This document shows positions 4,805 through 54,317 of a stretch of 64,000 bases of DNA, one piece after another. Location of the stretch: IMG/VR virus record IMGVR_UViG_3300030673_000004, positions 62,001-126,000 of that record; one strand, 5' to 3'. The position numbers and the translations under genes are program-made. Each line of letters begins with the position of its first letter. The stretch's first letter is position 1. Under the pieces are notes generated by a model, which searched no databases, was not told where the DNA came from, and saw only the letters and a program-made list of their open reading frames with translations.

Positions 4805-5548
4805 TTATCTGACACGAAGAGCAGGTATAGTAAATACCTGAGTTAGATCATGTACATTTGTAACAATGATCTCTTCTCCAGATTTACGTTGAAAACCAAC
4901 AACGCGAACCTGAATCGGCCTACCAGCTTTTCTAACAGAAATAACGTCACCTAACTGATATCCAAAGCGCTCTCCATGCTTTTTTGCCAAGAACGAGCGA
5001 TGAACTTCAAAACCAACAACAGAAGTCTCTTCAAAAGATAACGAATCTAACTGTTCTATAATTTCGGCCACAGCGGCAGGAGCTTGATCATGATCTAATA
5101 AAAAAGCGTCACAACCAGACTGATCGGCCTGAGGTATAAATTCCTCAAGAGGGAGTGTAACAGGAATTGGCTGCTCTGTAAGGGTCAAACGAGGACAGTG
5201 CTCCCGCTGTTTCAAATCACCCATAAACACAGCGTCACGCCTTCTCGGATCATTCCACGAAAGAAACTTAATGCAGGAGCCACAAAAAAAGCCAAAAGGA
5301 ACATCACGTTTATCTGGACCAGCATCAAAATAGCGCAAGTCTAAAGAACTAACATCATGACAAGGCACTGCGTCTGGAACATGATCTTTAGATATTTCGT
5401 CATCTACAAGAACGGACGTATCTTTAACACCCATCCTACGAGATAAAGCTGCAAGCTTTGACAAGGTATCGGTAGTGCTAACACCTTCAGCAGAAGTAGG
5501 TGTTAGCACTAATCCAGGTCTAGGACGGGGAAAGGCTGATGGTAACAT
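4805..5548 (-). CDS. Hypothetical protein
   Basis: 247-aa ORF packed in the minus-strand gene run. Confidence 0.65.
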   Translation of the reverse strand: MLPSAFPRPRPGLVLTPTSAEGVSTTDTLSKLAALSRRMGVKDTSVLVDDEISKDHVPDAVPCHDVSSLDLRYFDAGPDKRDVPFGFFCGSCIKFLSWNDPRRRDAVFMGDLKQREHCPRLTLTEQPIPVTLPLEEFIPQADQSGCDAFLLDHDQAPAAVAEIIEQLDSLSFEETSVVGFEVHRSFLAKKHGERFGYQLGDVISVRKAGRPIQVRVVGFQRKSGEEIIVTNVHDLTQVFTIPALRVR

Positions 5549-30187: not shown

Positions 30188-30263
30188 GCCGCGCATTAGT
30201 CTAAATGGTAAAGACATTCCGGAATCATTCCGGAAAATGTTGGTTCGAATCCAGCACGTGGCA
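30188..30263 (+). ncRNA. Atypical tRNA-like RNA with TCA at the tip of a palindromic anticodon arm
   Basis: D-arm GTCT/AGAC, T-arm GTTGG-TTCGAAT-CCAGC, acceptor with a 2-nt bulge; anticodon arm TTCCGGAA-TCA-TTCCGGAA. Confidence 0.7.
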
Positions 30264-30264
30264 T

Positions 30265-30360
30265 GATGGGATAGCTCAATTGGTAGAGCGGCTCGCCCCC
30301 TTTAGGGATCGGGTGTGAAGGAGACTTCGTCGGTTGATGGTTCGAATCCATCGCTCATCT
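30265..30360 (+). ncRNA. Atypical tRNA-like RNA with expanded anticodon region and long variable arm
   Basis: GATGGGA..TAGCTCAATTGGTAGAGC; GCTCG[CCCCCTTTAGGGAT]CGGGT; variable arm GTGAAG-GAGA-CTTCGT; GATGG-TTCGAAT-CCATC. Confidence 0.7.
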
Positions 30361-30793
30361 ATCTGTATAATAAGTAGTTGCGAACTTATTATTGTGCGCT
30401 TGAGCACTAGCCTGTATAAGGTTTTCTTTATACAGAAAGCAGAGCAACTTGGGAGTAGCCAAGTTATATTAACCTACTCGCAATCATGATCAAGATTAAA
30501 TAGAATCCGTTCTTGCTCGGGGCATATTGCAGACCGCCCATAGGTTTCAGACGTTATTGAAAATCTATGAATGTTTCTGCTAGACAATAAGCATTTCATA
30601 TGGAGACTCTATGTCCCTGCACGCATGCATCTAGTTAGCGCTTGCTCTGCTTGCACGATATACAGAACAGTTGATATATGTGAATGCTGAGTTGCTGTTT
30701 CCTGTGTAAATAGGTTACAGTTTGGTAGCATTTTGTGAAAGCAACTTACTACCACGAGGATGATACAGGTAATCTCGTAAAAACTGTATCAAT

Positions 30794-30866
30794 GCCAGTG
30801 TAGCTCAGTTGGTAGAGCAGTTGCTTTGTAAGCATCAGGTCGCGAGTCCAAGTCTCGCCGCTGGCT
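30794..30866 (+). tRNA. tRNA-Thr(TGT)
   Basis: GCCAGTG/CGCTGGC; loop TTTGTAA. Confidence 0.92.
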
Positions 30867-30867
30867 C

Positions 30868-30996
30868 TTGTTCCTTGCTGTTAAGAATGAAGTTCATCTT
30901 ACCTAAAACAAGATATTTTGGATTCGAATCCAAAATACGCTTAACCGCGTATGGCTTTGGTGCCAATTTCTTCATTTTGCTTGTTTGCAGGAACAA
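30868..30996 (+). ncRNA. Y-RNA-like element 1 (degenerate tRNA-mimic domain)
   Basis: TTGTTCCT/AGGAACAA stem; TGCTGTT...TTGTTTGC signature; inner hairpins in T-AS-D order (TTTTGGA-TTCGAA-TCCAAAA, TACGC/GCGTA, GGC-TTTGGT-GCC). Confidence 0.7.
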
Positions 30997-31001
30997 ACTT
31001 T

Positions 31002-31074
31002 TCAGTCATGCTGTTCTGACATCAGGTTCATCCTTTTAAGATATTTTCCCGATGTTGATTTGTTTGCTGACTGA
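31002..31074 (+). ncRNA. Y-RNA-like element 2 (minimal, 73 nt)
   Basis: TCAGTCA/TGACTGA stem; TGCTGTT...TTGTTTGC; GGTTCATC motif; no tRNA domain. Confidence 0.7.
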
Positions 31075-31087
31075 TTTACTGTAGAAA

Positions 31088-31227
31088 GGTCAGTGCTGTT
31101 AGAGATCGGTTACTTCCAATTTCAAGGACGAGGTCACAGGTTCGAGTCCTGTTCCTGGCTTTTAATGCCGGGATAGCTCAGTTGGTTAGAGCGCGTAAAC
31201 TATCCGGTTTCGTTTGTTTGCCTGACT
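31088..31227 (+). ncRNA. Y-RNA-like element 3 (YrlA-type, full tRNA-mimic domain)
   Basis: GTCAG/CTGAC stem and signature; T-arm ACAGG-TTCGAGT-CCTGT precedes acceptor TCCTGGC-loop-GCCGGGA, then D-arm GCTC-AGTTGGTTA-GAGC. Confidence 0.85.
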
Positions 31228-31232
31228 GTTAA

Positions 31233-31305
31233 TGGCCCTTAGCTCATCTGGTAGAGCGCTACTCTGATATGGTAGAGGTGCTTGGTTCGAGTCCAAGAGG
31301 GCCAA
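31233..31305 (+). tRNA. tRNA-Ile(GAT)
   Basis: TGGCCCT/AGGGCCA; CTACT-CTGATAT-GGTAG. Confidence 0.92.
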
Positions 31306-31311
31306 TTCTTT

Positions 31312-31377
31312 ATACTTGCTGTTAGTCTTCAGATACATCTTTGGCTTGTAAAACCTGAAGACAGTTGTTTGCAGTAT
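31312..31377 (+). ncRNA. Y-RNA-like element 4 (minimal, 66 nt)
   Basis: ATACT/AGTAT stem; TGCTGTT...TTGTTTGC; GTCTTCAG/CTGAAGAC; GATACATC motif. Confidence 0.7.
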
Positions 31378-31385
31378 GAAGATAT

Positions 31386-31457
31386 GCACGAGTAGGTCAG
31401 TGGTAGACCACCTGCTTGCCAAGTAGGATGTCGTGGGTCCGAAACCCATCTCGTGCT
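31386..31457 (+). tRNA. tRNA-Gly(GCC)
   Basis: GCACGAG/CTCGTGC, U73; loop TTGCCAA. Confidence 0.92.
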
Positions 31458-31581
31458 TAGATGCGTAAATGAAATATGTCAACAAATGCTTCTATCATAT
31501 CTAGTAATCCGTGTATTCCATCTGGAGTTTATCCTGTGAAATCACCATCACCAGCCACACCTCCGAAGCATACATAAAAGT

Positions 31582-31706
31582 CCTATCTCAGTATAACCTT
31601 ACGAGCTAGCTGCCCTTGTTAGTGATAATAAGGAAGGTCAGGTCAAAGTCCTGGAGCGCCCCCGTTAGGCACAATAAGGAGCTTACGGTAACGGTACTGA
31701 GATAGG
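31582..31706 (+). ncRNA. Unassigned rod/multibranch RNA (125 nt)
   Basis: Perfect 12-bp helix CCTATCTCAGTA/TACTGAGATAGG enclosing further helices and CAGG-TCAAAGT-CCTG. Confidence 0.55.
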
Positions 31707-31710
31707 CAAT

Positions 31711-31782
31711 GCACCAGTAATTCAGTGGTAGAATCTCTGCCTTCCAAGCAGTTGGTCCCCAGTTCGATCCTGGGTTGGTGCT
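31711..31782 (+). tRNA. tRNA-Gly(TCC)
   Basis: GCACCAG/TTGGTGC, U73; loop CTTCCAA. Confidence 0.92.
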
Positions 31783-31966
31783 TTTGTTCATGGTGATGCT
31801 TGAGCAATAAATAGTATACTTTCATCACAGAGTATAATATAAATCTCCCGTGCATAAGAAGATGCGGAAATTCGGATAACGCAGCTTATGTGCTAACGGA
31901 CACTGGTGTTGATCGCACCCTGTTAGGGAGTTTTTGATCAGTACGTTTTCAGATCAAAACATTATT

Positions 31967-32050
31967 GGGTTGGATTGTAGTACGGCTACTACAGATGGAC
32001 TGTAAATCCATTGCCTTTCGGCTTTGCCTGTTCGAATCCGGAGCAACCCA
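31967..32050 (+). tRNA. tRNA-Tyr(GTA), imperfect T-stem
   Basis: ATGGA-CTGTAAA-TCCAT; variable arm GCC-TTTC-GGC; GGGTTG/CAACCC acceptor. Confidence 0.8.
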
Positions 32051-32089
32051 CTTCATTTTTCATAATCACCATTGTTAAGGGAGTTACTT

Positions 32090-33478
32090 ATGCCTACCAT
32101 CGTTGAGAATGCTCACGGTGTTCGGGCTTACGAATTTGGAGATGAAGTGTCTCTTCGTAGGCTTGTTCTTGCGTCCTTGCTGACTGAAGATTCTTCAGAC
32201 ATGCAAAAGCAAATCGCTGACTTGGTGCCTCGTGTAAGTCCTACGTCTGTGATGAATCTGGCGATCACAGCTCGTAAGGATTATGCGCTACGCAAGGTTC
32301 CCTTGTTTTTGGTTCGTGAGATGTCTCGCTATGAAAACCATCGTCCCTATGTAGCAGATACTCTAGCTCAAGTTATTGAGCGTGCTGATGAGATGAGCAC
32401 TTTTCTATCCATGTATTGGGCAGGAAAGAATGTAGGCGAGGGGCGTGAGCCTCTTGCTAGGCAGGTTAAGCTTGGGTTGGGGCGTGCTTTTGGGAAGTTC
32501 AATGCTTTCTCTTTGGCTCGTTATGATCGTAATAGTGCTGCATTTTCCATGCAGGATGTTATTAGGATCGCGCATCCTCGACCTGAGTCTCCTGAGCAGG
32601 AAGTACTCTTTCGACAGATTGCTAAGGGTGAAGCTCTTCCTCCTGTAAAGGATTGGGAACACGAGCTATCTCAGTCAAAGGACAAGAAGGCTTCATGGGT
32701 TTCTCTTTTGGAGAACAAGCAGCTTGGTGGCCTTGCTCTGTTGAAGAACTTGCGTAACATGCTGCAAGCCGGTGTCTCTCAAAGTTTGATTGTCTCAACT
32801 ATTGCTCAGCATCCGTTCAAGTATGTTTTGCCCTTTCGGTTCATCTCTGCTCTTCGTGAGCTTGTGCTATCTGATGTAGTTGTCTCTAACGAACTGCGGG
32901 ATGCTTTAGAACAAGCAATGTTTCGCGGTTTGGTGGATTTTCCTAAGCTTGACGGAGATACCGTGTTCCTTGTTGATGTGTCTGGGTCTATGAGTCATCC
33001 TCTTGGGATGTCTTTCTCAGATCGGCACGGTAGGACTCATGCTAGCTCTATGACTCGATCTGATGGCGCTGCTGCTTTGACTATGATGCTGAATGAAATT
33101 TGTGATGTACCTCACATCTTTAAGTTTCATACGCGAATCATTCCAATTTCCGGGTCTCGCGGTTTTGCTCTAGGGTCTCAAGTTAACTATGCGCGGCAAA
33201 ACACACGTCTGGGTGACTGCTTAAAGCAGGCTCAGCATGAGATGTTGGTTAAGGGAATCACTCCTAAGCGTTTGATTGTTTTAACGGATGAGGAGTCTCA
33301 GGATCCTGTTGGGGAAGGATTCGCTCAGTATAACTACATGATCAACGTGAAGTCGGCTTCTTACAGTATTGCTTATAAGTCATGGATCCGCATGACTGGC
33401 TTTAGTGAGCATATTGTTAAGCTGCTTGTTGGGCATGAGCGGTTAGATAAGTATGTTAAGGAACATGTAGCATTGTGA
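32090..33478 (+). CDS. rsr: Ro60/Rsr TROVE-vWA RNA-binding protein
   Basis: LRRLVLASLL, LRKVPLFLVREM, VIERADEM, KFNAFSLARYDR, WEHELS, LALLKNLRNM, VLPFRFISA, VDVSGSM (MIDAS), LIVLTDEESQD; ATG with an AAGGGAG RBS. Confidence 0.93.
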   Translation: MPTIVENAHGVRAYEFGDEVSLRRLVLASLLTEDSSDMQKQIADLVPRVSPTSVMNLAITARKDYALRKVPLFLVREMSRYENHRPYVADTLAQVIERADEMSTFLSMYWAGKNVGEGREPLARQVKLGLGRAFGKFNAFSLARYDRNSAAFSMQDVIRIAHPRPESPEQEVLFRQIAKGEALPPVKDWEHELSQSKDKKASWVSLLENKQLGGLALLKNLRNMLQAGVSQSLIVSTIAQHPFKYVLPFRFISALRELVLSDVVVSNELRDALEQAMFRGLVDFPKLDGDTVFLVDVSGSMSHPLGMSFSDRHGRTHASSMTRSDGAAALTMMLNEICDVPHIFKFHTRIIPISGSRGFALGSQVNYARQNTRLGDCLKQAQHEMLVKGITPKRLIVLTDEESQDPVGEGFAQYNYMINVKSASYSIAYKSWIRMTGFSEHIVKLLVGHERLDKYVKEHVAL

Positions 33479-33529
33479 ATTTCTGCCTGCAGTGCCTTGA
33501 GGGGAGGGTATTGTGGGTAGATTTTGTTC

Positions 33530-33603
33530 GGGCGAGTAGCTCAGATGGCTAGAGCAGTTGGTTCTTAACCAACGGGTCGTGGGTTCGAGTCCCACCTCGC
33601 CCA
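33530..33603 (+). tRNA. tRNA-Lys(CTT)
   Basis: GGGCGAG/CTCGCCC; GTTGG-TTCTTAA-CCAAC. Confidence 0.93.
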
Positions 33604-33606
33604 TAG

Positions 33607-33750
33607 CTTGAATACATGCTGTTTGACTTCGGATACATCAACTAGATGGTCGCAGGTTCGAATCCTGTTAAGGCTTTGAAAGAAGCTTTATAGCTCAGTT
33701 GGTAGAGCACCAAGCTAAATTTCCGATTTCTTTTGTTTGCTGTATTTGAG
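33607..33750 (+). ncRNA. Y-RNA-like element 5 (YrlA-type, full tRNA-mimic domain)
   Basis: AATACA/TGTATT stem and signature; GCAGG-TTCGAAT-CCTGT, then TAAGGCTTT-GAAA-GAAGCTTTA, then GCTC-AGTTGGTA-GAGC. Confidence 0.85.
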
Positions 33751-33755
33751 TTTTT

Positions 33756-33819
33756 GGGGATGTCGTCTAGTGGTCTAGTTTTCATGGTGGCTACTTGAGT
33801 TCGAATCTCAGCCTCCCTA
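33756..33819 (+). pseudogene. tRNA-Glu(TTC)-like pseudogene with internal deletion
   Basis: GGGGATGTCGTCTAGTGGTCTAG joins directly to TTTTCATGGTGG; the D-stem 3' strand and anticodon-stem 5' strand are missing; T-arm intact. Confidence 0.7.
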
Positions 33820-33832
33820 TTACTTAGATCTG

Positions 33833-33861
33833 TTGACACAAATCTTTGACTGTTGTATATT
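33833..33861 (+). promoter_or_regulatory. sigma70 promoter
   Basis: TTGACA-17-TG.TATATT. Confidence 0.75.
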
Positions 33862-34159: not shown

Positions 34160-34512
34160 GGGGGTGTATTGGTTTCGACAGATTCTGTGAGAATGATAGC
34201 GCGTGTCGAGGGTCCAGGTGGCCTCGTAAAAACCTGGAAAAAGTCAAACGGCGAAGAGATCTACTCTTACGCTCTGGCTGTCTGAGAAATCAGATACCAG
34301 AACCTTGCAATGAGATGCTGTTGTAGTTGCTTGGTATAATCTAGACGGCTGGGTTACAGTAATGTTTGTAGTCTGTAACTAAGAAAATCAAACTACGGTG
34401 TGTATGAGTCTGTTCTTCGACGCATGCGCAGTTAAGATCAAAAGAAGAACTACACACGTAGTGTTTTCATTTAAGTAGTTTTTGGACGCGGGTTCGAGTC
34501 CCGCCACCTCCA
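34160..34512 (+). ncRNA. ssrA: tmRNA; tag (A)GEEIYSYALAV at 34250-34285
   Basis: GGGGGTG TATTGGTTTCGAC 5' end; GACGCGGGTTCGAGTCCCGCCACCTCCA 3' end with G3-U; internal tag ORF ending ALAV-stop. Confidence 0.95.
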
Positions 34513-34545
34513 TTGTGTAAATGAGATCTATTTAAGGAGATCTCT

Positions 34546-47449: not shown

Positions 47450-47887
47450 ATGTCAGATGAGTCCCTTACAAAAGTTCAGCATCGTGTATCTTCTATCCTG
47501 CATGTGCAGGTGGGTGAATCAGGTGTCTGGGAGCCTACTACAGATCAGCTTGATGCTCTAGTCAGTCAGTTTGTTTCGGCAGTAAACACAAATGTAGCTC
47601 TTGCAGTAGTAGCTACTCGTAAGGGCGTGACTGCTCAGTGTATCCATATTCCAGATACCGATGCTGCTATACTGCATGTTGAGGCAGGCGCACCTGGATG
47701 GGAGCCGTTACCATCCGAGCTTAAAGATCTAACAGATTTGTTTGAGAAAGCAGCTACTTCTGACGGTAGTATTGCTGTAGTAGCTACTCGTACCGGTGTG
47801 ACTGCTCATGTTGTGGATTTATCCAATCCTGATTCTGAGGCATTTCCTGAGTTTCTATATGACACTGATTGCGAGGATGCGTCATGA
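47450..47887 (+). CDS. Protein with two tandem ~60-aa repeats
   Basis: ILHV..G..G.WEP....L..L...F..A.....AVVATR.GVTA occurs twice. Confidence 0.8.
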   Translation: MSDESLTKVQHRVSSILHVQVGESGVWEPTTDQLDALVSQFVSAVNTNVALAVVATRKGVTAQCIHIPDTDAAILHVEAGAPGWEPLPSELKDLTDLFEKAATSDGSIAVVATRTGVTAHVVDLSNPDSEAFPEFLYDTDCEDAS

Positions 47888-48561
47888 ATCTCTATGAACA
47901 TGCTGTGAGCGAATTTGAGTTGCTTGAGCAGAATTTGGACAGTGATCCAGATAAGCATCCTATCATTTTAGAATTCAAAGCTGAAATTCTTTCTCTAGTT
48001 AAGCGTTTTGCGGACTCTGGTCCATCTGGTGGTTCTGCTCCCTTTTATGCGTCTGCCGTATCTCGGGCTATTAAAGATCTCTTTATGTTTGATCCTATTG
48101 GTCCCCTCACAGGAGATGATAGTGAGTGGGTAGATACATCTGAAATTAGTGGCCTGTCTGAAGGAACGCTATGGCAGAATAAGCGGCTATCTTCTGTGTT
48201 TAAGGATGGTAATGATCCGGCTCATTACTTGGATGCTGTTGTATTCCAAGGTGAGTCTGATTATGATCGTTTCAGTGGTCATGTTGATAATGTTTCCAGT
48301 GTTTGGTGTATTAAGAGTTTTCCTTTTAGACCCAAAACATTCACAATAGACGTGTATCGTGTTCCTAGTGAGACAGATCCAGATCGTGTCAGTTGCCGTG
48401 AAGGTGATTATTTATACCACATTAAAGATCCTTCACAGTTAGAGGCTGTTCGCGACTACTATGATGAGAAGATATCTCGGATATCTTCAATAGACTCAAC
48501 ATCGGCTGTAGGCGCGCAAGTTGATGCTGTTTGCTGCCCAAAGACAGTAAAGTTGGACTAA
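47884..48561 (+). CDS. Hypothetical protein
   Basis: GAGG RBS; GPSGGSA, PIGPLTGDDSEW, WQNKRLSSVFK. Confidence 0.75.
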   Translation: MNLYEHAVSEFELLEQNLDSDPDKHPIILEFKAEILSLVKRFADSGPSGGSAPFYASAVSRAIKDLFMFDPIGPLTGDDSEWVDTSEISGLSEGTLWQNKRLSSVFKDGNDPAHYLDAVVFQGESDYDRFSGHVDNVSSVWCIKSFPFRPKTFTIDVYRVPSETDPDRVSCREGDYLYHIKDPSQLEAVRDYYDEKISRISSIDSTSAVGAQVDAVCCPKTVKLD

Positions 48562-48574
48562 TTTTGTTTGCATC

Positions 48575-48609: not shown

Positions 48610-48682
48610 AGCGGGATAGAGCAGTTGGTAGCTTGCTTGGTTCATACCCAAGAGGTCGTTGGTTCAAATCCAACTCCCGCAA
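48610..48682 (+). tRNA. Initiator tRNA-fMet(CAT)
   Basis: A1:A72 mismatch, GAGCAG..GGTAGC D-arm; CTTGG-TTCATAC-CCAAG (only two of the three G-C pairs). Confidence 0.85.
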
Positions 48683-48704
48683 CTTTTCTTAGTGCATACT
48701 TAAA

Positions 48705-48793
48705 CTCAATATACTGTTAGTTTTCGGATACATCTTCGCCATACATGAAGACCTCCTGAAAGGGTAATCCGATTACGTAAGTTTGTTATTGAG
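48705..48793 (+). ncRNA. Y-RNA-like element 6 (divergent, remote)
   Basis: CTCAATA/TATTGAG stem; TACTGTT..TTTCGGATACATC...TCCGAT..TTTGTT matches elements 4 and 5. Confidence 0.55.
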
Positions 48794-48802
48794 GTTACTT
48801 GA

Positions 48803-48875
48803 GGGCGGATAGATTAGCGGCTAAATCCATACGTTTACACCGTATTGACCGTGGGTTCGAGTCCCACTTCGCCCA
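48803..48875 (+). tRNA. tRNA-Val(TAC)
   Basis: GGGCGGA/TTCGCCC A; ATACG-TTTACAC-CGTAT. Confidence 0.92.
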
Positions 48876-53593: not shown

Positions 53594-53622
53594 TTGACAA
53601 GTATACATTAGAAATGTATACT
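53594..53622 (+). promoter_or_regulatory. sigma70 promoter with extended GTATACA-N7-TGTATAC palindrome
   Basis: TTGACA-agtatacattagaaatg-TATACT. Confidence 0.85.
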
Positions 53623-53660
53623 TGTTTTTGTACTTAAACTTTAACTGTGGCTGTACTTTA

Positions 53661-54317
53661 ATGTCTGTTCAAAAATATCCACGAACGTATCATGCGCCCT
53701 GGTCTGATTGTCTTGCTTCAGATGACAAGTACATCGGGTCGTTGGTTGCCTTTGATGGTAAGCGTGTTATTGTTACAGAGAAAATGGATGGTGAGAACAC
53801 TACGCTTATGTCTGACCGGGCTTTTGCTCGCAGCATTGATTCCGTTCATCATTACAGTCGTGATTGGGTTAAGGCATTTTGGGCTACAATCAAAAATGAT
53901 ATTCCTAAGGACTGGCGTATCTGTGGTGAGAATTTGTGGGCACAACACGCTATTGCCTACAACGACCTCAAGTCTTTCTTTATGGGGTTTTCTGTCTGGG
54001 ATGACAGGAACATCTCATTGTCCTGGGATGCTACTCTTGAGTGGTTTGACCTTCTGGGTGTTACTCCAGTAACAGCCATCTATGATGGCCTCTACGATGT
54101 TGCTGCTATCATGGATGCTTTTGATGCTTATAAGAAAACAGCAGGTCATGACGTAGAGGGGTATGTCATTCGCGTGGCAGATGAGATTGCTTATGCTGAT
54201 TTCAGGACGCACATGTGCAAGTACGTTCGTAAGAATCTTGTTCAGCTTGATACGGCTCATTGGCTGTATGGCGGTCGTGCTGTCATTCCAAATAAACTCT
54301 ATACTGAAAGCACCTAA
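53661..54317 (+). CDS. ATP-dependent RNA ligase (Rnl2-like)
   Basis: KYPRTYH.PWS, VIVTEKMDGENT (intact KxDG), ICGENL, GFSVWD, EGYVIR, KYVR. Confidence 0.9.
   Translation: MSVQKYPRTYHAPWSDCLASDDKYIGSLVAFDGKRVIVTEKMDGENTTLMSDRAFARSIDSVHHYSRDWVKAFWATIKNDIPKDWRICGENLWAQHAIAYNDLKSFFMGFSVWDDRNISLSWDATLEWFDLLGVTPVTAIYDGLYDVAAIMDAFDAYKKTAGHDVEGYVIRVADEIAYADFRTHMCKYVRKNLVQLDTAHWLYGGRAVIPNKLYTEST

What the first reader, a model, noticed from the sequence alone, without database searches (positions are those of the whole stretch)
30868..33750. Phage Ro60 gene surrounded by an array of five related Y-RNA-like genes
Seen: five elements (30868, 31002, 31088, 31312, 33607) share one scaffold: variable closing stem, TGCTGTT, inner helix, a G(A/T)T(A/T)C(A/T)TC-like motif, and TTGTTTGC. 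Their closing stems differ in sequence yet all pair, which is covariation within one genome. They are interleaved with tRNAs on both sides of an intact TROVE-vWA gene. Established: bacterial Ro (Rsr) binds Y RNAs encoded next to it, tethers partners such as PNPase, and is linked to RNA repair; a mycobacteriophage Ro/Y pair is known. Inference: a multi-Y-RNA Ro system in a jumbo phage, with interchangeable adaptors that could recruit different nucleases/ligases or shield phage tRNAs from host anticodon nucleases.
Basis: partly seen in the sequence, partly recalled or inferred. Interest (0 to 1): 0.9.

Follow-up and report, generated by a model that had tools for sequence, protein, structure and literature searches.

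The report
Phage Ro60 gene with six Y-RNAs
A giant phage carries a Ro60-type RNA-binding ring protein and six small structured RNAs of the Y-RNA kind packed between its tRNA genes. This is a real example of a known system, and arrays of this size turn out to be common at such genes in phages and bacteria.

Summary
All five elements sit at the stated coordinates. A sixth copy lies at 48705-48793, between tRNA-Met and tRNA-Val. All six share one scaffold: closing stem, bulged U, 2-bp clamp, asymmetric internal loop, inner helix, then a UUACUUC-like motif. Both helices covary within this genome (94% of cells paired against 63% after shuffling). Three copies are long and carry a tRNA-like module, and two of these hit Rfam YrlA below threshold. 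Three are short hairpins.

The ORF at 32090-33478 is a Ro60 ortholog with a TROVE ring, a vWA domain and a full MIDAS motif. Its best structural match is Thermus phage phiLo Ro60 (TM 0.75).

A covariance model built from these copies found 238 matches in 91 sources (the window plus 90 phage TROVE loci) and 267 in 80 bacterial TROVE loci. Every match is on the TROVE strand and most lie close to the gene. It found none in 842 kb of control viral DNA. Loci usually hold 2-4 copies and up to 7 (Caulobacter phage CcrColossus).

The Ro/Y-RNA reading is therefore supported. Protein binding, RNA processing and partners (probably host PNPase) are inferred, not shown. The anticodon-nuclease shield idea has no support.

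The parts
32090..33478 (+). Ro60 ortholog: TROVE HEAT-repeat ring plus vWA domain, 462 aa
   Evidence: ORF listed. Pfam TROVE 1e-11 and PHROG 850 'RNA-binding protein' 1e-31. phmmer against PDB: phiLo Ro60 9l5y/9kop, 2e-19 over residues 41-410. AlphaFold2 model pLDDT 84.6. The top 13 Foldseek PDB hits are all Ro60 (TM 0.75 phiLo, 0.66 D. radiodurans Rsr). MIDAS residues D296, S298, S300 and D400 are invariant and T372 nearly so in 29 homologs.
30868..30996 (+). E1, long Y-RNA-like element. Closing stem 30868-30875/30989-30996, bulged U 30876, clamp 30877-78/30987-88, inner helix 30884-92/30970-78. The distal part has a degenerate T-arm-like palindrome. It starts directly after tRNA-Thr.
   Evidence: R2 51.9 bits and R3 62.0 bits. 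Fold z -4.66. No Rfam YrlA hit. Ortholog at L237:249-381.
31002..31074 (+). E2, short hairpin-type Y-RNA-like element (YrlB-like). Closing stem 31002-31008/31068-31074.
   Evidence: R2 66.6 bits. Fold z -2.5. Orthologs L237:383-461 and L240:216-294 have compensatory changes in both helices.
31088..31227 (+). E3, long Y-RNA-like element with a tRNA-like module: T arm, 7-bp acceptor-like stem-loop and D arm. Closing stem 31088-31093/31222-31227.
   Evidence: R2 44.8 bits and R3 63.9 bits. Rfam YrlA 34.8 bits at 31128-31198, below the gathering score of 69. Orthologs in L235, L237, L238, L239 and L242.
31307..31382 (+). E4, short hairpin-type element with a 10-bp closing stem. It fills the spacer between tRNA-Ile (ends 31305) and tRNA-Gly (starts 31386).
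   Evidence: R1 97.3 bits and R2 68.1 bits. Orthologs in L235, L237 and L239.
33606..33751 (+). E5, long element with a tRNA-like module, directly after tRNA-Lys(CUU) and downstream of the Ro60 gene.
   Evidence: R2 56.4 bits. Rfam YrlA 37.7 bits at 33626-33732, below the gathering score. Fold z -3.09. R2 found no counterpart in L234, L237 or L240, which carry sequence downstream of the gene.
48705..48793 (+). Short/intermediate form between tRNA-Met (48610-48683) and tRNA-Val (48803-48875). The clamp is A-U/C-G instead of G-C/C-G.
   Evidence: R1 39.0, R2 60.1 and R3 56.1 bits. Sequence.
30794..32051 (+). tRNA genes interleaved with E1-E4: Thr 30794-30867, Ile 31233-31305, Gly(GCC) 31386-31457, Gly(UCC) 31711-31782, Tyr 31967-32051.
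   Evidence: ARAGORN and Rfam tRNA. The same order Thr-Y-Y-Y-Ile-Y-Gly-Gly-Tyr-TROVE is seen in L237 and L239, and partly in the shorter related contigs.
33482..33603 (+). Hairpin followed by a T-run just after the Ro60 stop codon (33482-33521), then tRNA-Lys(CUU) 33530-33603, which precedes E5.

Best explanation
The locus is a phage Ro60/Y-RNA system.

The 462-aa protein forms the Ro60 ring (TROVE HEAT repeats closed by a vWA domain with a complete MIDAS site). Six small RNAs are encoded on the same strand. Three are long (about 130-146 nt) and carry a tRNA-like module in which the Ro-binding stem takes the place of the anticodon arm. Three are short hairpins (about 73-89 nt).

All six share a module that is the likely protein-binding site: a variable closing stem, an invariant bulged U, a 2-bp G:C clamp, an asymmetric loop (UGUU(A) opposite a 3' side that ends in UUGUUU or a close variant), an 8-9 bp inner helix usually ending in C-R-G (G-A-A-G in E1), and then a UUACUUC-like motif.

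The RNAs sit within a few nucleotides of tRNA genes or of each other. No strong promoter lies within the array. They are therefore most likely made as parts of polycistronic tRNA transcripts and released by the ordinary tRNA-processing nucleases (RNase P on the 3' side, RNase Z or E on the 5' side).

By analogy with D. radiodurans, Salmonella and Thermus phage phiLo, each RNA would dock on the Ro ring through the shared module. Its variable distal part would then gate the ring or tether a partner, most likely host PNPase. The effect would be to reshape decay and quality control of structured RNAs, including the phage's 34 tRNAs and its tmRNA, during infection.

Shown here: the RNA structure, its conservation, its exclusive association with TROVE genes, and the protein fold. 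Inferred: expression as discrete RNAs, the processing route, binding to the protein, the identity of partners and the biological outcome.
For: Protein:
- Searches show a full-length Ro60 fold and a conserved MIDAS site.

RNA scaffold:
- The five reported elements fold alike.
- Model hits in the window are exactly six, all on the + strand.
- Covariation within the genome is 94.1% of cells paired, against 62.6% after shuffling.
- Across 42 sequences it is 94.6% against 56.4%, and 36-47% when the 3' partners are slid. All 17 pairs show changes on both sides.

Link to Ro60:
- R3 gives 238 hits in the window plus 90 phage TROVE loci, and 267 hits in 80 bacterial TROVE loci. All 505 are on the TROVE strand and most lie close to the gene.
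- It gives 0 hits in 842 kb of unrelated viral loci.
- The link holds in loci with no tRNAs within 9-13 kb: L288 (6 tandem copies), L325, L287 and L245.

Y-RNA character:
- E3 and E5 match Rfam YrlA in the YrlA-specific order of T arm, acceptor-like stem and D arm, at 34.8 and 37.7 bits.
- The family has two length classes. 49 of 53 long members carry a T-loop motif, against 1 of 97 short ones. This mirrors YrlA and YrlB (PMC4201824).

Processing:
- Gaps to neighbouring tRNAs or elements are 0-19 nt and mostly 6 nt or less.
- No 11/12 promoter match lies on the + strand between 29000 and 33833.
- D. radiodurans Yrn2-tRNA-Yrn1 is a known polycistronic precedent (PMC4201824).

Mechanism by analogy:
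- phiLo Ro60 binds two upstream Yrl RNAs and host PNPase and attenuates PNPase activity (PMC12135203).
Against: - There are no expression data for this uncultured phage.
- No binding data exist for this subfamily.
- The RNAs score below the Rfam YrlA gathering threshold (35-38 bits against 69).
- The GNCGAA/CGAA motif used to define bacterial and phiLo Y RNAs is present only in altered form (CGG-A/U-UAC).
- E1 has only a degenerate tRNA-like part.
- No PNPase gene or other obvious partner lies in the window.
- The covariation counts come from model-fitted alignments, which lean towards the modelled structure.
- Which conserved piece contacts the protein (the outer bulged-U loop or the inner CGG-UUACUUC junction) is unknown.
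Confidence: 0.78

Rival explanations
1. The elements are structured spacers that punctuate and stabilise polycistronic tRNA transcripts. They would act as processing or insulation cassettes for tRNA maturation and work independently of the Ro60 protein.
For: In the window, all six abut tRNA genes or each other. In L301 and L314, further copies sit exactly between tRNAs.
Against: - The family follows TROVE genes, not tRNAs. L288 has 6 tandem copies and L245 has 7, and L325 and L287 also carry copies, with no tRNA in 9-13 kb.
- The window has 34 tRNAs but only six elements, five of them within 1.3 kb of the Ro60 gene.
- Control viral loci gave 0 hits.
Confidence: 0.1
2. The long elements act mainly as tRNA mimics that occupy or titrate host tRNA-binding proteins, such as modification enzymes, RNase P, the CCA-adding enzyme or a tRNA-directed defence factor. 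Ro60 would only stabilise them. Counter-defence would be the main function, not PNPase tethering.
For: - E3 has a 7-bp acceptor-like stem, the feature that makes M. smegmatis YrlA an RNase P substrate (PMC4201824).
- A Ro60-like protein of coliphage Bas63 was scored as a counter to the ppl defence system (PMC11482910).
- The window also holds a Tad3-type Thoeris inhibitor and an Rnl2-type RNA ligase.
Against: - Half of the copies here, and about two thirds of the best 150 family members, are short forms without any tRNA-like module.
- No anticodon arm exists in the long forms, so anticodon nucleases have no target.
- No defence system or host is known for this phage.
Confidence: 0.08
3. The repeats are DNA-level elements, either miniature mobile repeats or recombination sites left by tRNA-array shuffling, with no RNA function.
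For: There are several copies in one genome, mostly in intergenic DNA of a tRNA island.
Against: - The primary sequence of the stems differs between copies while pairing is kept, including G-U pairs that work only in RNA on this strand.
- All 505 family hits lie on the strand of the adjacent TROVE gene.
- Positional orthologs are kept across relatives with 61-90% protein identity.
Confidence: 0.02

Closest known systems
Thermus phage phiLo Ro60 with Yrl1 and Yrl2 (Hu et al., NAR 2025, PMC12135203; PDB 9kop, 9l5y)
   Same: - A phage-encoded Ro60 ring with a vWA domain. It is the best sequence and structure match to the window protein.
- Y-RNA-like genes lie just upstream on the same strand.
- The RNAs have a stem-bulge-stem architecture.
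   Different: - phiLo has two RNAs, defined by a CGAA motif. The window has six, with a CGG-(A/U)UAC variant and an extra conserved outer loop.
- Protein identity is only about 23%.
- No tRNA island or tRNA-like module was reported for phiLo.
- Binding to RNA and to host PNPase was shown for phiLo. Nothing has been shown for this phage.
Bacterial YrlA/YrlB Y RNAs with Rsr (Chen et al., RNA 2014, PMC4201824; Rfam RF02553)
   Same: - The RNAs are encoded within a few kb of the Ro60 gene, on the same strand.
- One class has a T arm, acceptor-like stem and D arm in YrlA order. A second class is a plain hairpin.
- There are at least two RNAs per locus.
- They are co-transcribed with tRNA in D. radiodurans.
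- YrlA-related RNAs were already reported in 22 phages.
   Different: - The window RNAs score 35-38 bits against a gathering score of 69. Bacterial members of the same TROVE subfamily score 39-46 bits.
- The Rfam alignment of E5 starts at the 5' strand of the inner helix, so the closing stem, bulged U, clamp and asymmetric loop lie outside the Rfam match.
- The copy number is higher.
Metazoan Y RNAs with Ro60 (for example Xenopus Ro60-Y RNA, PDB 1yvp)
   Same: - The protein is a ring bound to small RNAs whose 5' and 3' ends form a conserved helix with a single bulged pyrimidine on the 5' strand, followed by an internal loop and an upper stem.
- There are several paralogous Y RNAs per genome.
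- The window protein matches these structures at TM 0.57-0.67.
   Different: - Metazoan Y RNAs are RNA polymerase III transcripts with no tRNA-like module, and the conserved sequences differ.
- The resemblance between the bulged-U helix here and the bulged-C helix there comes from my recollection. It is a lead, not a test.
Caulobacter phage CcrColossus gp139 locus (JX100810)
   Same: - A jumbo phage with a TROVE gene 34% identical to the window protein.
- Seven tandem copies of the same RNA scaffold lie directly upstream (L245:4620-5821), in both long and short forms.
   Different: - The RNAs are unannotated in GenBank. One is partly annotated as tRNA-Gln and others carry 'terminator' features.
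- The loop sequence is GGCGU/UGUUCC rather than UGCUGUU/UUGUUUGC.
- The array is not embedded among tRNAs.

Membership tests
Ro60 / Rsr protein family (TROVE + vWA ring) | TROVE (HEAT-repeat) domain detectable by sequence | tested here: met
   Pfam PF05731 at 1e-11, 45 bits against a cutoff of 23. phmmer to phiLo Ro60 gives 2e-19 over residues 41-410.
Ro60 / Rsr protein family (TROVE + vWA ring) | Full-length fold: helical ring closed by a C-terminal vWA domain | tested here: met
   AlphaFold2 model with pLDDT 84.6 and pTM 0.76. The top 13 Foldseek PDB hits are all Ro60, aligned over 480-550 columns at TM 0.57-0.75.
Ro60 / Rsr protein family (TROVE + vWA ring) | MIDAS motif DxSxS...T...D in the vWA domain | tested here: met
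   D296, S298, S300 and D400 are invariant and T372 nearly invariant in 29 homologs.
Ro60 / Rsr protein family (TROVE + vWA ring) | Binds Y RNAs and misfolded RNAs | not testable with these tools
   Needs EMSA, RIP-seq or a complex structure.
Rfam YrlA (RF02553) | Score at or above the curated gathering threshold of 69 bits | tested here: not met
   E5 scores 37.7 bits and E3 34.8 bits. E1, E2, E4 and E6 are not hit.
Rfam YrlA (RF02553) | tRNA-like module in the order T arm, acceptor-like stem-loop, D arm, enclosed by a stem | tested here: met
   Met for E3 and E5: the Rfam alignment covers the T arm, stem-loop and D arm and the folds agree. E1 is degenerate. E2, E4 and E6 lack the module.
Bacterial Y RNAs in the wide sense (Chen et al. 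2014) | Encoded within a few kb of the Ro60 gene on the same strand | tested here: met
   E1-E5 lie within 1.3 kb upstream or 0.13 kb downstream, on the same strand. E6 is 15 kb downstream on the same strand. All 505 family hits are on the TROVE strand.
Bacterial Y RNAs in the wide sense (Chen et al. 2014) | GNCGAA(N)G motif near the 5' end, the proposed Ro contact | tested here: inconclusive
   The Rfam alignment places E5's CGGAUACAU opposite the model's CgaAUGCuu. The family consensus is C-G/A-G-UUACUUC. This is related to the published motif but not the same.
Bacterial Y RNAs in the wide sense (Chen et al. 2014) | Bound and stabilised by the Ro60 protein in vivo | not testable with these tools
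   No expression or binding data exist for this uncultured phage.

The most novel reading that the evidence does not exclude
The short-Ro60 subfamily found in phages and bacteria may use a shared docking module (bulged U, G:C clamp, UG.A/GCUUGUU loop) carried by a set of 2-7 differentiated Y RNAs. The ring would then be a programmable hub: each RNA brings a different client or effector. In large phages, the set embedded in the tRNA island would serve counter-defence or protection of the phage translation apparatus. Examples would be sequestering host PNPase, or engaging tRNA-directed host factors through the tRNA-like modules. The positional conservation of the four upstream copies across relatives with 61-90% protein identity would then reflect non-redundant functions.
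Probability: 0.2. Interest if true: 0.75.

Novelty: new variant of a known kind. Interest (0 to 1): 0.42.

Why it matters
Ro60 and Y RNAs are conserved from bacteria to humans, but what the bacterial and phage versions do is still poorly understood. This window is a good worked example. The survey it prompted shows three things.
- Multi-copy Y-RNA-like arrays are the norm next to one large Ro60 subfamily, in both phages and bacteria.
- The RNAs share a docking module that the Rfam YrlA match does not cover.
- They are mostly unannotated or mis-annotated. One CcrColossus copy is partly annotated as tRNA-Gln.

This gives experimenters a defined RNA motif to mutate. It also points to cultured systems where phage Ro60 function can be tested genetically: CcrColossus on Caulobacter, the Brevundimonas jumbo phages and the Rhizobium phages. 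The specific claim that made the finding look exceptional, an unusually large array, does not hold.

Tried and rejected
- I scanned IMG/VR for the two short motifs at short and long spacing. The first 100 of those loci later gave 0 model hits, so I reused them as a negative control.
- The motif pair at 48525-48571 looked like a sixth copy. It lies in the 3' end of the Tad3-like ORF, does not fold (z +0.93) and is missed by all models, so I rejected it.
- The TGCTGTT at 30693 folds into an unrelated hairpin and is not hit by any model.
- Rfam at gathering thresholds returned only tRNAs and the tmRNA.
- MAFFT alignment of the short copies put the inner helix out of register, so RNAalifold recovered only the closing stem. 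I fixed this by building R1 from four orthologs with a hand-written structure and then iterating.
- With filters off, R1 lost the long copies.
- I looked for an E5 counterpart downstream of the Ro60 gene in close relatives (L234, L237, L240). There is none.
- megablast against GenBank phages found no close relative of the window.
- crAss001 has a related TROVE gene but gave no significant model hit. The scaffold is therefore not universal to all phage TROVE genes.
- The per-locus copy numbers are my hand tally of the tables. They were not computed by script.


Full report
**What is in the sequence**

The window comes from a 375.5-kb IMG/VR contig. Its replication genes are phage-type: topoisomerase II subunits, an SbcD-like exonuclease and a DNA ligase. 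It carries 34 tRNA genes and a tmRNA, all on the + strand. No close relative exists among GenBank phages.

Each carries TGCTGTT near its 5' end and TTGTTTGC near its 3' end. At short spacing the pair occurs three times, against 0.02 expected. One of those three (48525-48571) is a chance match inside a coding ORF.

All five fold into the same layout:
- a closing stem of 6-11 bp;
- one bulged U;
- a G-C/C-G clamp;
- an asymmetric internal loop;
- an inner helix of 8-9 bp;
- a motif of the form (A/U)U(A/U)C(A/U)UC.

**Models and the sixth copy**

I built a covariance model from four orthologs of the E4-type copy (R1). I then iterated it on its own hits to give R2 and R3.

R2 finds exactly six matches in the 64 kb window, all on the + strand. 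They are the five reported elements plus a sixth at 48702-48796, between tRNA-Met and tRNA-Val. In the sixth copy the clamp G-C has become A-U through changes on both strands.

Among the six copies, 94.1% of cells pair. This compares with 62.6% after shuffling and 29-45% when the 3' partners are slid. Fifteen of 17 pairs changed on both sides. The alignment is fitted to the model, which inflates such counts somewhat. A model-free MAFFT/RNAalifold run still recovered the closing stem, with 6 of 9 pairs compensatory.

**Two classes of RNA**

E1, E3 and E5 are 129-146 nt long. E3 and E5 contain a T arm, an acceptor-like stem-loop and a D arm in the permuted order typical of YrlA. They hit Rfam YrlA at 34.8 and 37.7 bits, below the gathering score of 69. 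E1 has only a degenerate version and gets no Rfam hit.

E2, E4 and E6 are 73-89 nt hairpins, like YrlB.

Across the 150 best family members the lengths are bimodal (66-109 nt and 120-164 nt). The T-loop motif occurs in 49 of 53 long members and in 1 of 97 short ones.

**The protein**

ORF 32090-33478 encodes 462 aa.
- It has a Pfam TROVE match.
- It aligns with Thermus phage phiLo Ro60 over residues 41-410 at E 2e-19.
- An AlphaFold2 model (pLDDT 84.6) has Ro60 structures as its 13 best PDB matches: phiLo TM 0.75, D. radiodurans Rsr 0.66, Xenopus and human Ro60 0.57-0.67.
- The MIDAS residues D296, S298, S300 and D400 are invariant, and T372 nearly so, in 29 homologs.

It is a Ro60 ortholog of a short (about 430-470 aa) subfamily that is abundant in metagenomes. 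There are 2403 clusters at E <= 1e-20 among the 8000 candidates scored, 389 confirmed viral stretches and at least 547 confirmed stretches in bacterial and archaeal species genomes.

**Relatives**

Contigs encoding proteins 61-90% identical share the gene order. L237 and L239 show the full order tRNA-Thr, three elements, tRNA-Ile, one element, tRNA-Gly, tRNA-Gly, tRNA-Tyr, Ro60. The shorter contigs show parts of it. The elements there have different stem sequences but the same pairing. This positional conservation argues that the four upstream copies are individually maintained. R2 found no counterpart of E5 in L234, L237 or L240, which carry sequence downstream of the gene.

**Survey**

| Searched with R3 (E <= 0.05) | DNA searched | Hits | Strand |
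|---|---|---|---|
| Window plus 90 phage TROVE loci | 803 kb | 238 | all on the TROVE strand |
| 80 bacterial TROVE loci of the same subfamily | 547 kb | 267 | all on the TROVE strand |
| 100 unrelated viral loci holding both short motifs by chance | 842 kb | 0 | none |

In the phage loci, most hits lie within about 1 kb upstream or 1.7 kb downstream of the gene. In the bacterial loci (Acidobacteriaceae, Bradyrhizobium, Caulobacteraceae and others), nearly all lie within the 3 kb upstream flank.

The link is to the TROVE gene and not to tRNAs. L288 (six tandem copies), L325, L287 and CcrColossus have no tRNA within 9-13 kb.

By my hand tally, most phage loci hold 2-4 copies. L288, L255 and L304 hold 6, L292 holds 5 and CcrColossus holds 7. 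In CcrColossus one copy is partly annotated as tRNA-Gln. Bacterial loci average 3.3 copies, and 4-6 is common.

The window's five-plus-one is therefore at the upper end but ordinary.

**What is conserved family-wide**
- the bulged U (150 of 150);
- a GG or GC clamp;
- a loop G (150 of 150);
- an inner helix ending in C-(G/A)-G;
- UUACUUC, with its U, C and C invariant or nearly so;
- an A-rich stretch before the 3' strand of the inner helix;
- a 3' loop GCUUGUU.

In the Rfam alignment of E5, the match starts at the 5' strand of the inner helix, with E5's CGGAUACAU opposite the model's CgaAUGCuu. The outer closing stem, bulged U, clamp and asymmetric loop lie outside that match. Bacterial members of this subfamily also stay below the Rfam threshold, at 39-46 bits. 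For that reason I call the RNAs Y-RNA-like and a variant, not members of RF02553.

**Mechanism**

The elements touch their neighbours:
- E1 begins right after tRNA-Thr.
- E4 fills the spacer between tRNA-Ile and tRNA-Gly, leaving 1 nt and 3 nt.
- E5 begins 2 nt after tRNA-Lys.
- E6 sits between two tRNAs.

The phage's strong TTGACA-N17-TATATT promoters occur at 33833, 34029, 48575 and elsewhere, but not within the E1-E4 array. The simplest reading is co-transcription with tRNAs and release by tRNA-processing enzymes. D. radiodurans Yrn2-tRNA-Yrn1 is a precedent (PMC4201824).

Binding to the ring through the shared module, and tethering or gating through the variable part, follows from the established behaviour of Rsr with Y RNA and PNPase. 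It also follows from phiLo Ro60, which binds two upstream Yrl RNAs and host PNPase and attenuates PNPase (PMC12135203). These steps are inferred, not shown.

The tRNA-like modules have no anticodon arm, and half of the copies have no tRNA-like part at all.

A counter-defence role remains possible. A Ro60-like protein of coliphage Bas63 scored as a counter to the ppl system (PMC11482910). The window also encodes a Tad3-type Thoeris inhibitor and an Rnl2-type RNA ligase.

**Comparison with what is known, and verdict**

Phage Ro60 genes with Y RNAs are already established:
- YrlA-related RNAs in 22 phages (PMC4201824);
- two RNAs bound by phiLo Ro60 (PMC12135203);
- three abundant RNAs upstream of an Rsr-like gene in a Listeria phage (PMC12282133);
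- TROVE proteins noted in jumbo phages (PMC7824862).

Relative to the papers I could search, three things appear new: how common arrays of 3-7 copies are, the shared outer docking module, and the tight embedding in tRNA islands. I could not read the 2020 Annual Review on bacterial Ro60, so prior mention of large arrays cannot be excluded.

The identification is supported. The functional speculation is untested.

Noticed in passing
window 30188-30262: A cloverleaf-shaped RNA with a normal T arm, but an 8-bp 'anticodon' stem closed by a 3-nt loop (fold z -3.96). Neither ARAGORN nor Rfam calls it a tRNA. It looks like a tRNA-like RNA with no usable anticodon loop, and it sits directly before the odd 96-nt tRNA below.
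   Followed up: partly
window 30265-30360: A 96-nt 'tRNA-???' (Rfam tRNA 36.8 bits) with a long insert in the anticodon/variable region. It could be an intron-containing or otherwise atypical tRNA.
   Followed up: no
window 33756-33819: Right after E5 there is a weak tRNA-like sequence with a good T arm but no clear anticodon arm (Rfam tRNA 20.9 bits, below threshold). The fold is not better than shuffles.
   Followed up: partly
window 31580-31707: A 12-bp long-range helix encloses about 100 nt of structured RNA between the two tRNA-Gly genes (fold z -4.15). It is absent from relative L237, where the two tRNA-Gly genes are 11 nt apart. It could be an inserted element or another ncRNA.
   Followed up: partly
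window 47869-48558: An ORF with a Tad3 domain (type I Thoeris inhibitor, Pfam PF25185, 6e-24), just upstream of a strong promoter, tRNA-Met and E6.
   Followed up: no
window 53622-54317: An Rnl2-type RNA ligase (Pfam PF09414, 2e-27) inside the tRNA island. This is consistent with a phage RNA-repair capacity.
   Followed up: no
window 34160-34515: A phage-encoded tmRNA (Rfam 178.7 bits), 0.4 kb downstream of E5. Related contigs (L240, L314) also carry a tmRNA close to the Ro60 gene.
   Followed up: no
window 9987-57434 (nine sites): Nine exact TTGACA-N17-TATATT promoter matches against 0.09 expected, eight of them on the + strand in the tRNA island. Three (49791, 50550, 52575) share nearly the same spacer, ACAAAATTAATG.
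   Followed up: no
L245:5035-5102 (Caulobacter phage CcrColossus, JX100810): The GenBank 'tRNA-Gln' lies inside one of seven Y-RNA-like copies (5027-5199), and ARAGORN finds no tRNA there. It is probably the T-arm part of a tRNA-like module that was mis-annotated. Some annotated 'terminators' upstream of gp139 lie at or within copies of the array.
   Followed up: partly
L395:5608-5666: A SECIS_3-like element (60.2 bits, gathering score 63) lies downstream of the TROVE gene in an Acidobacteriaceae MAG. It is probably unrelated to this finding.
   Followed up: no
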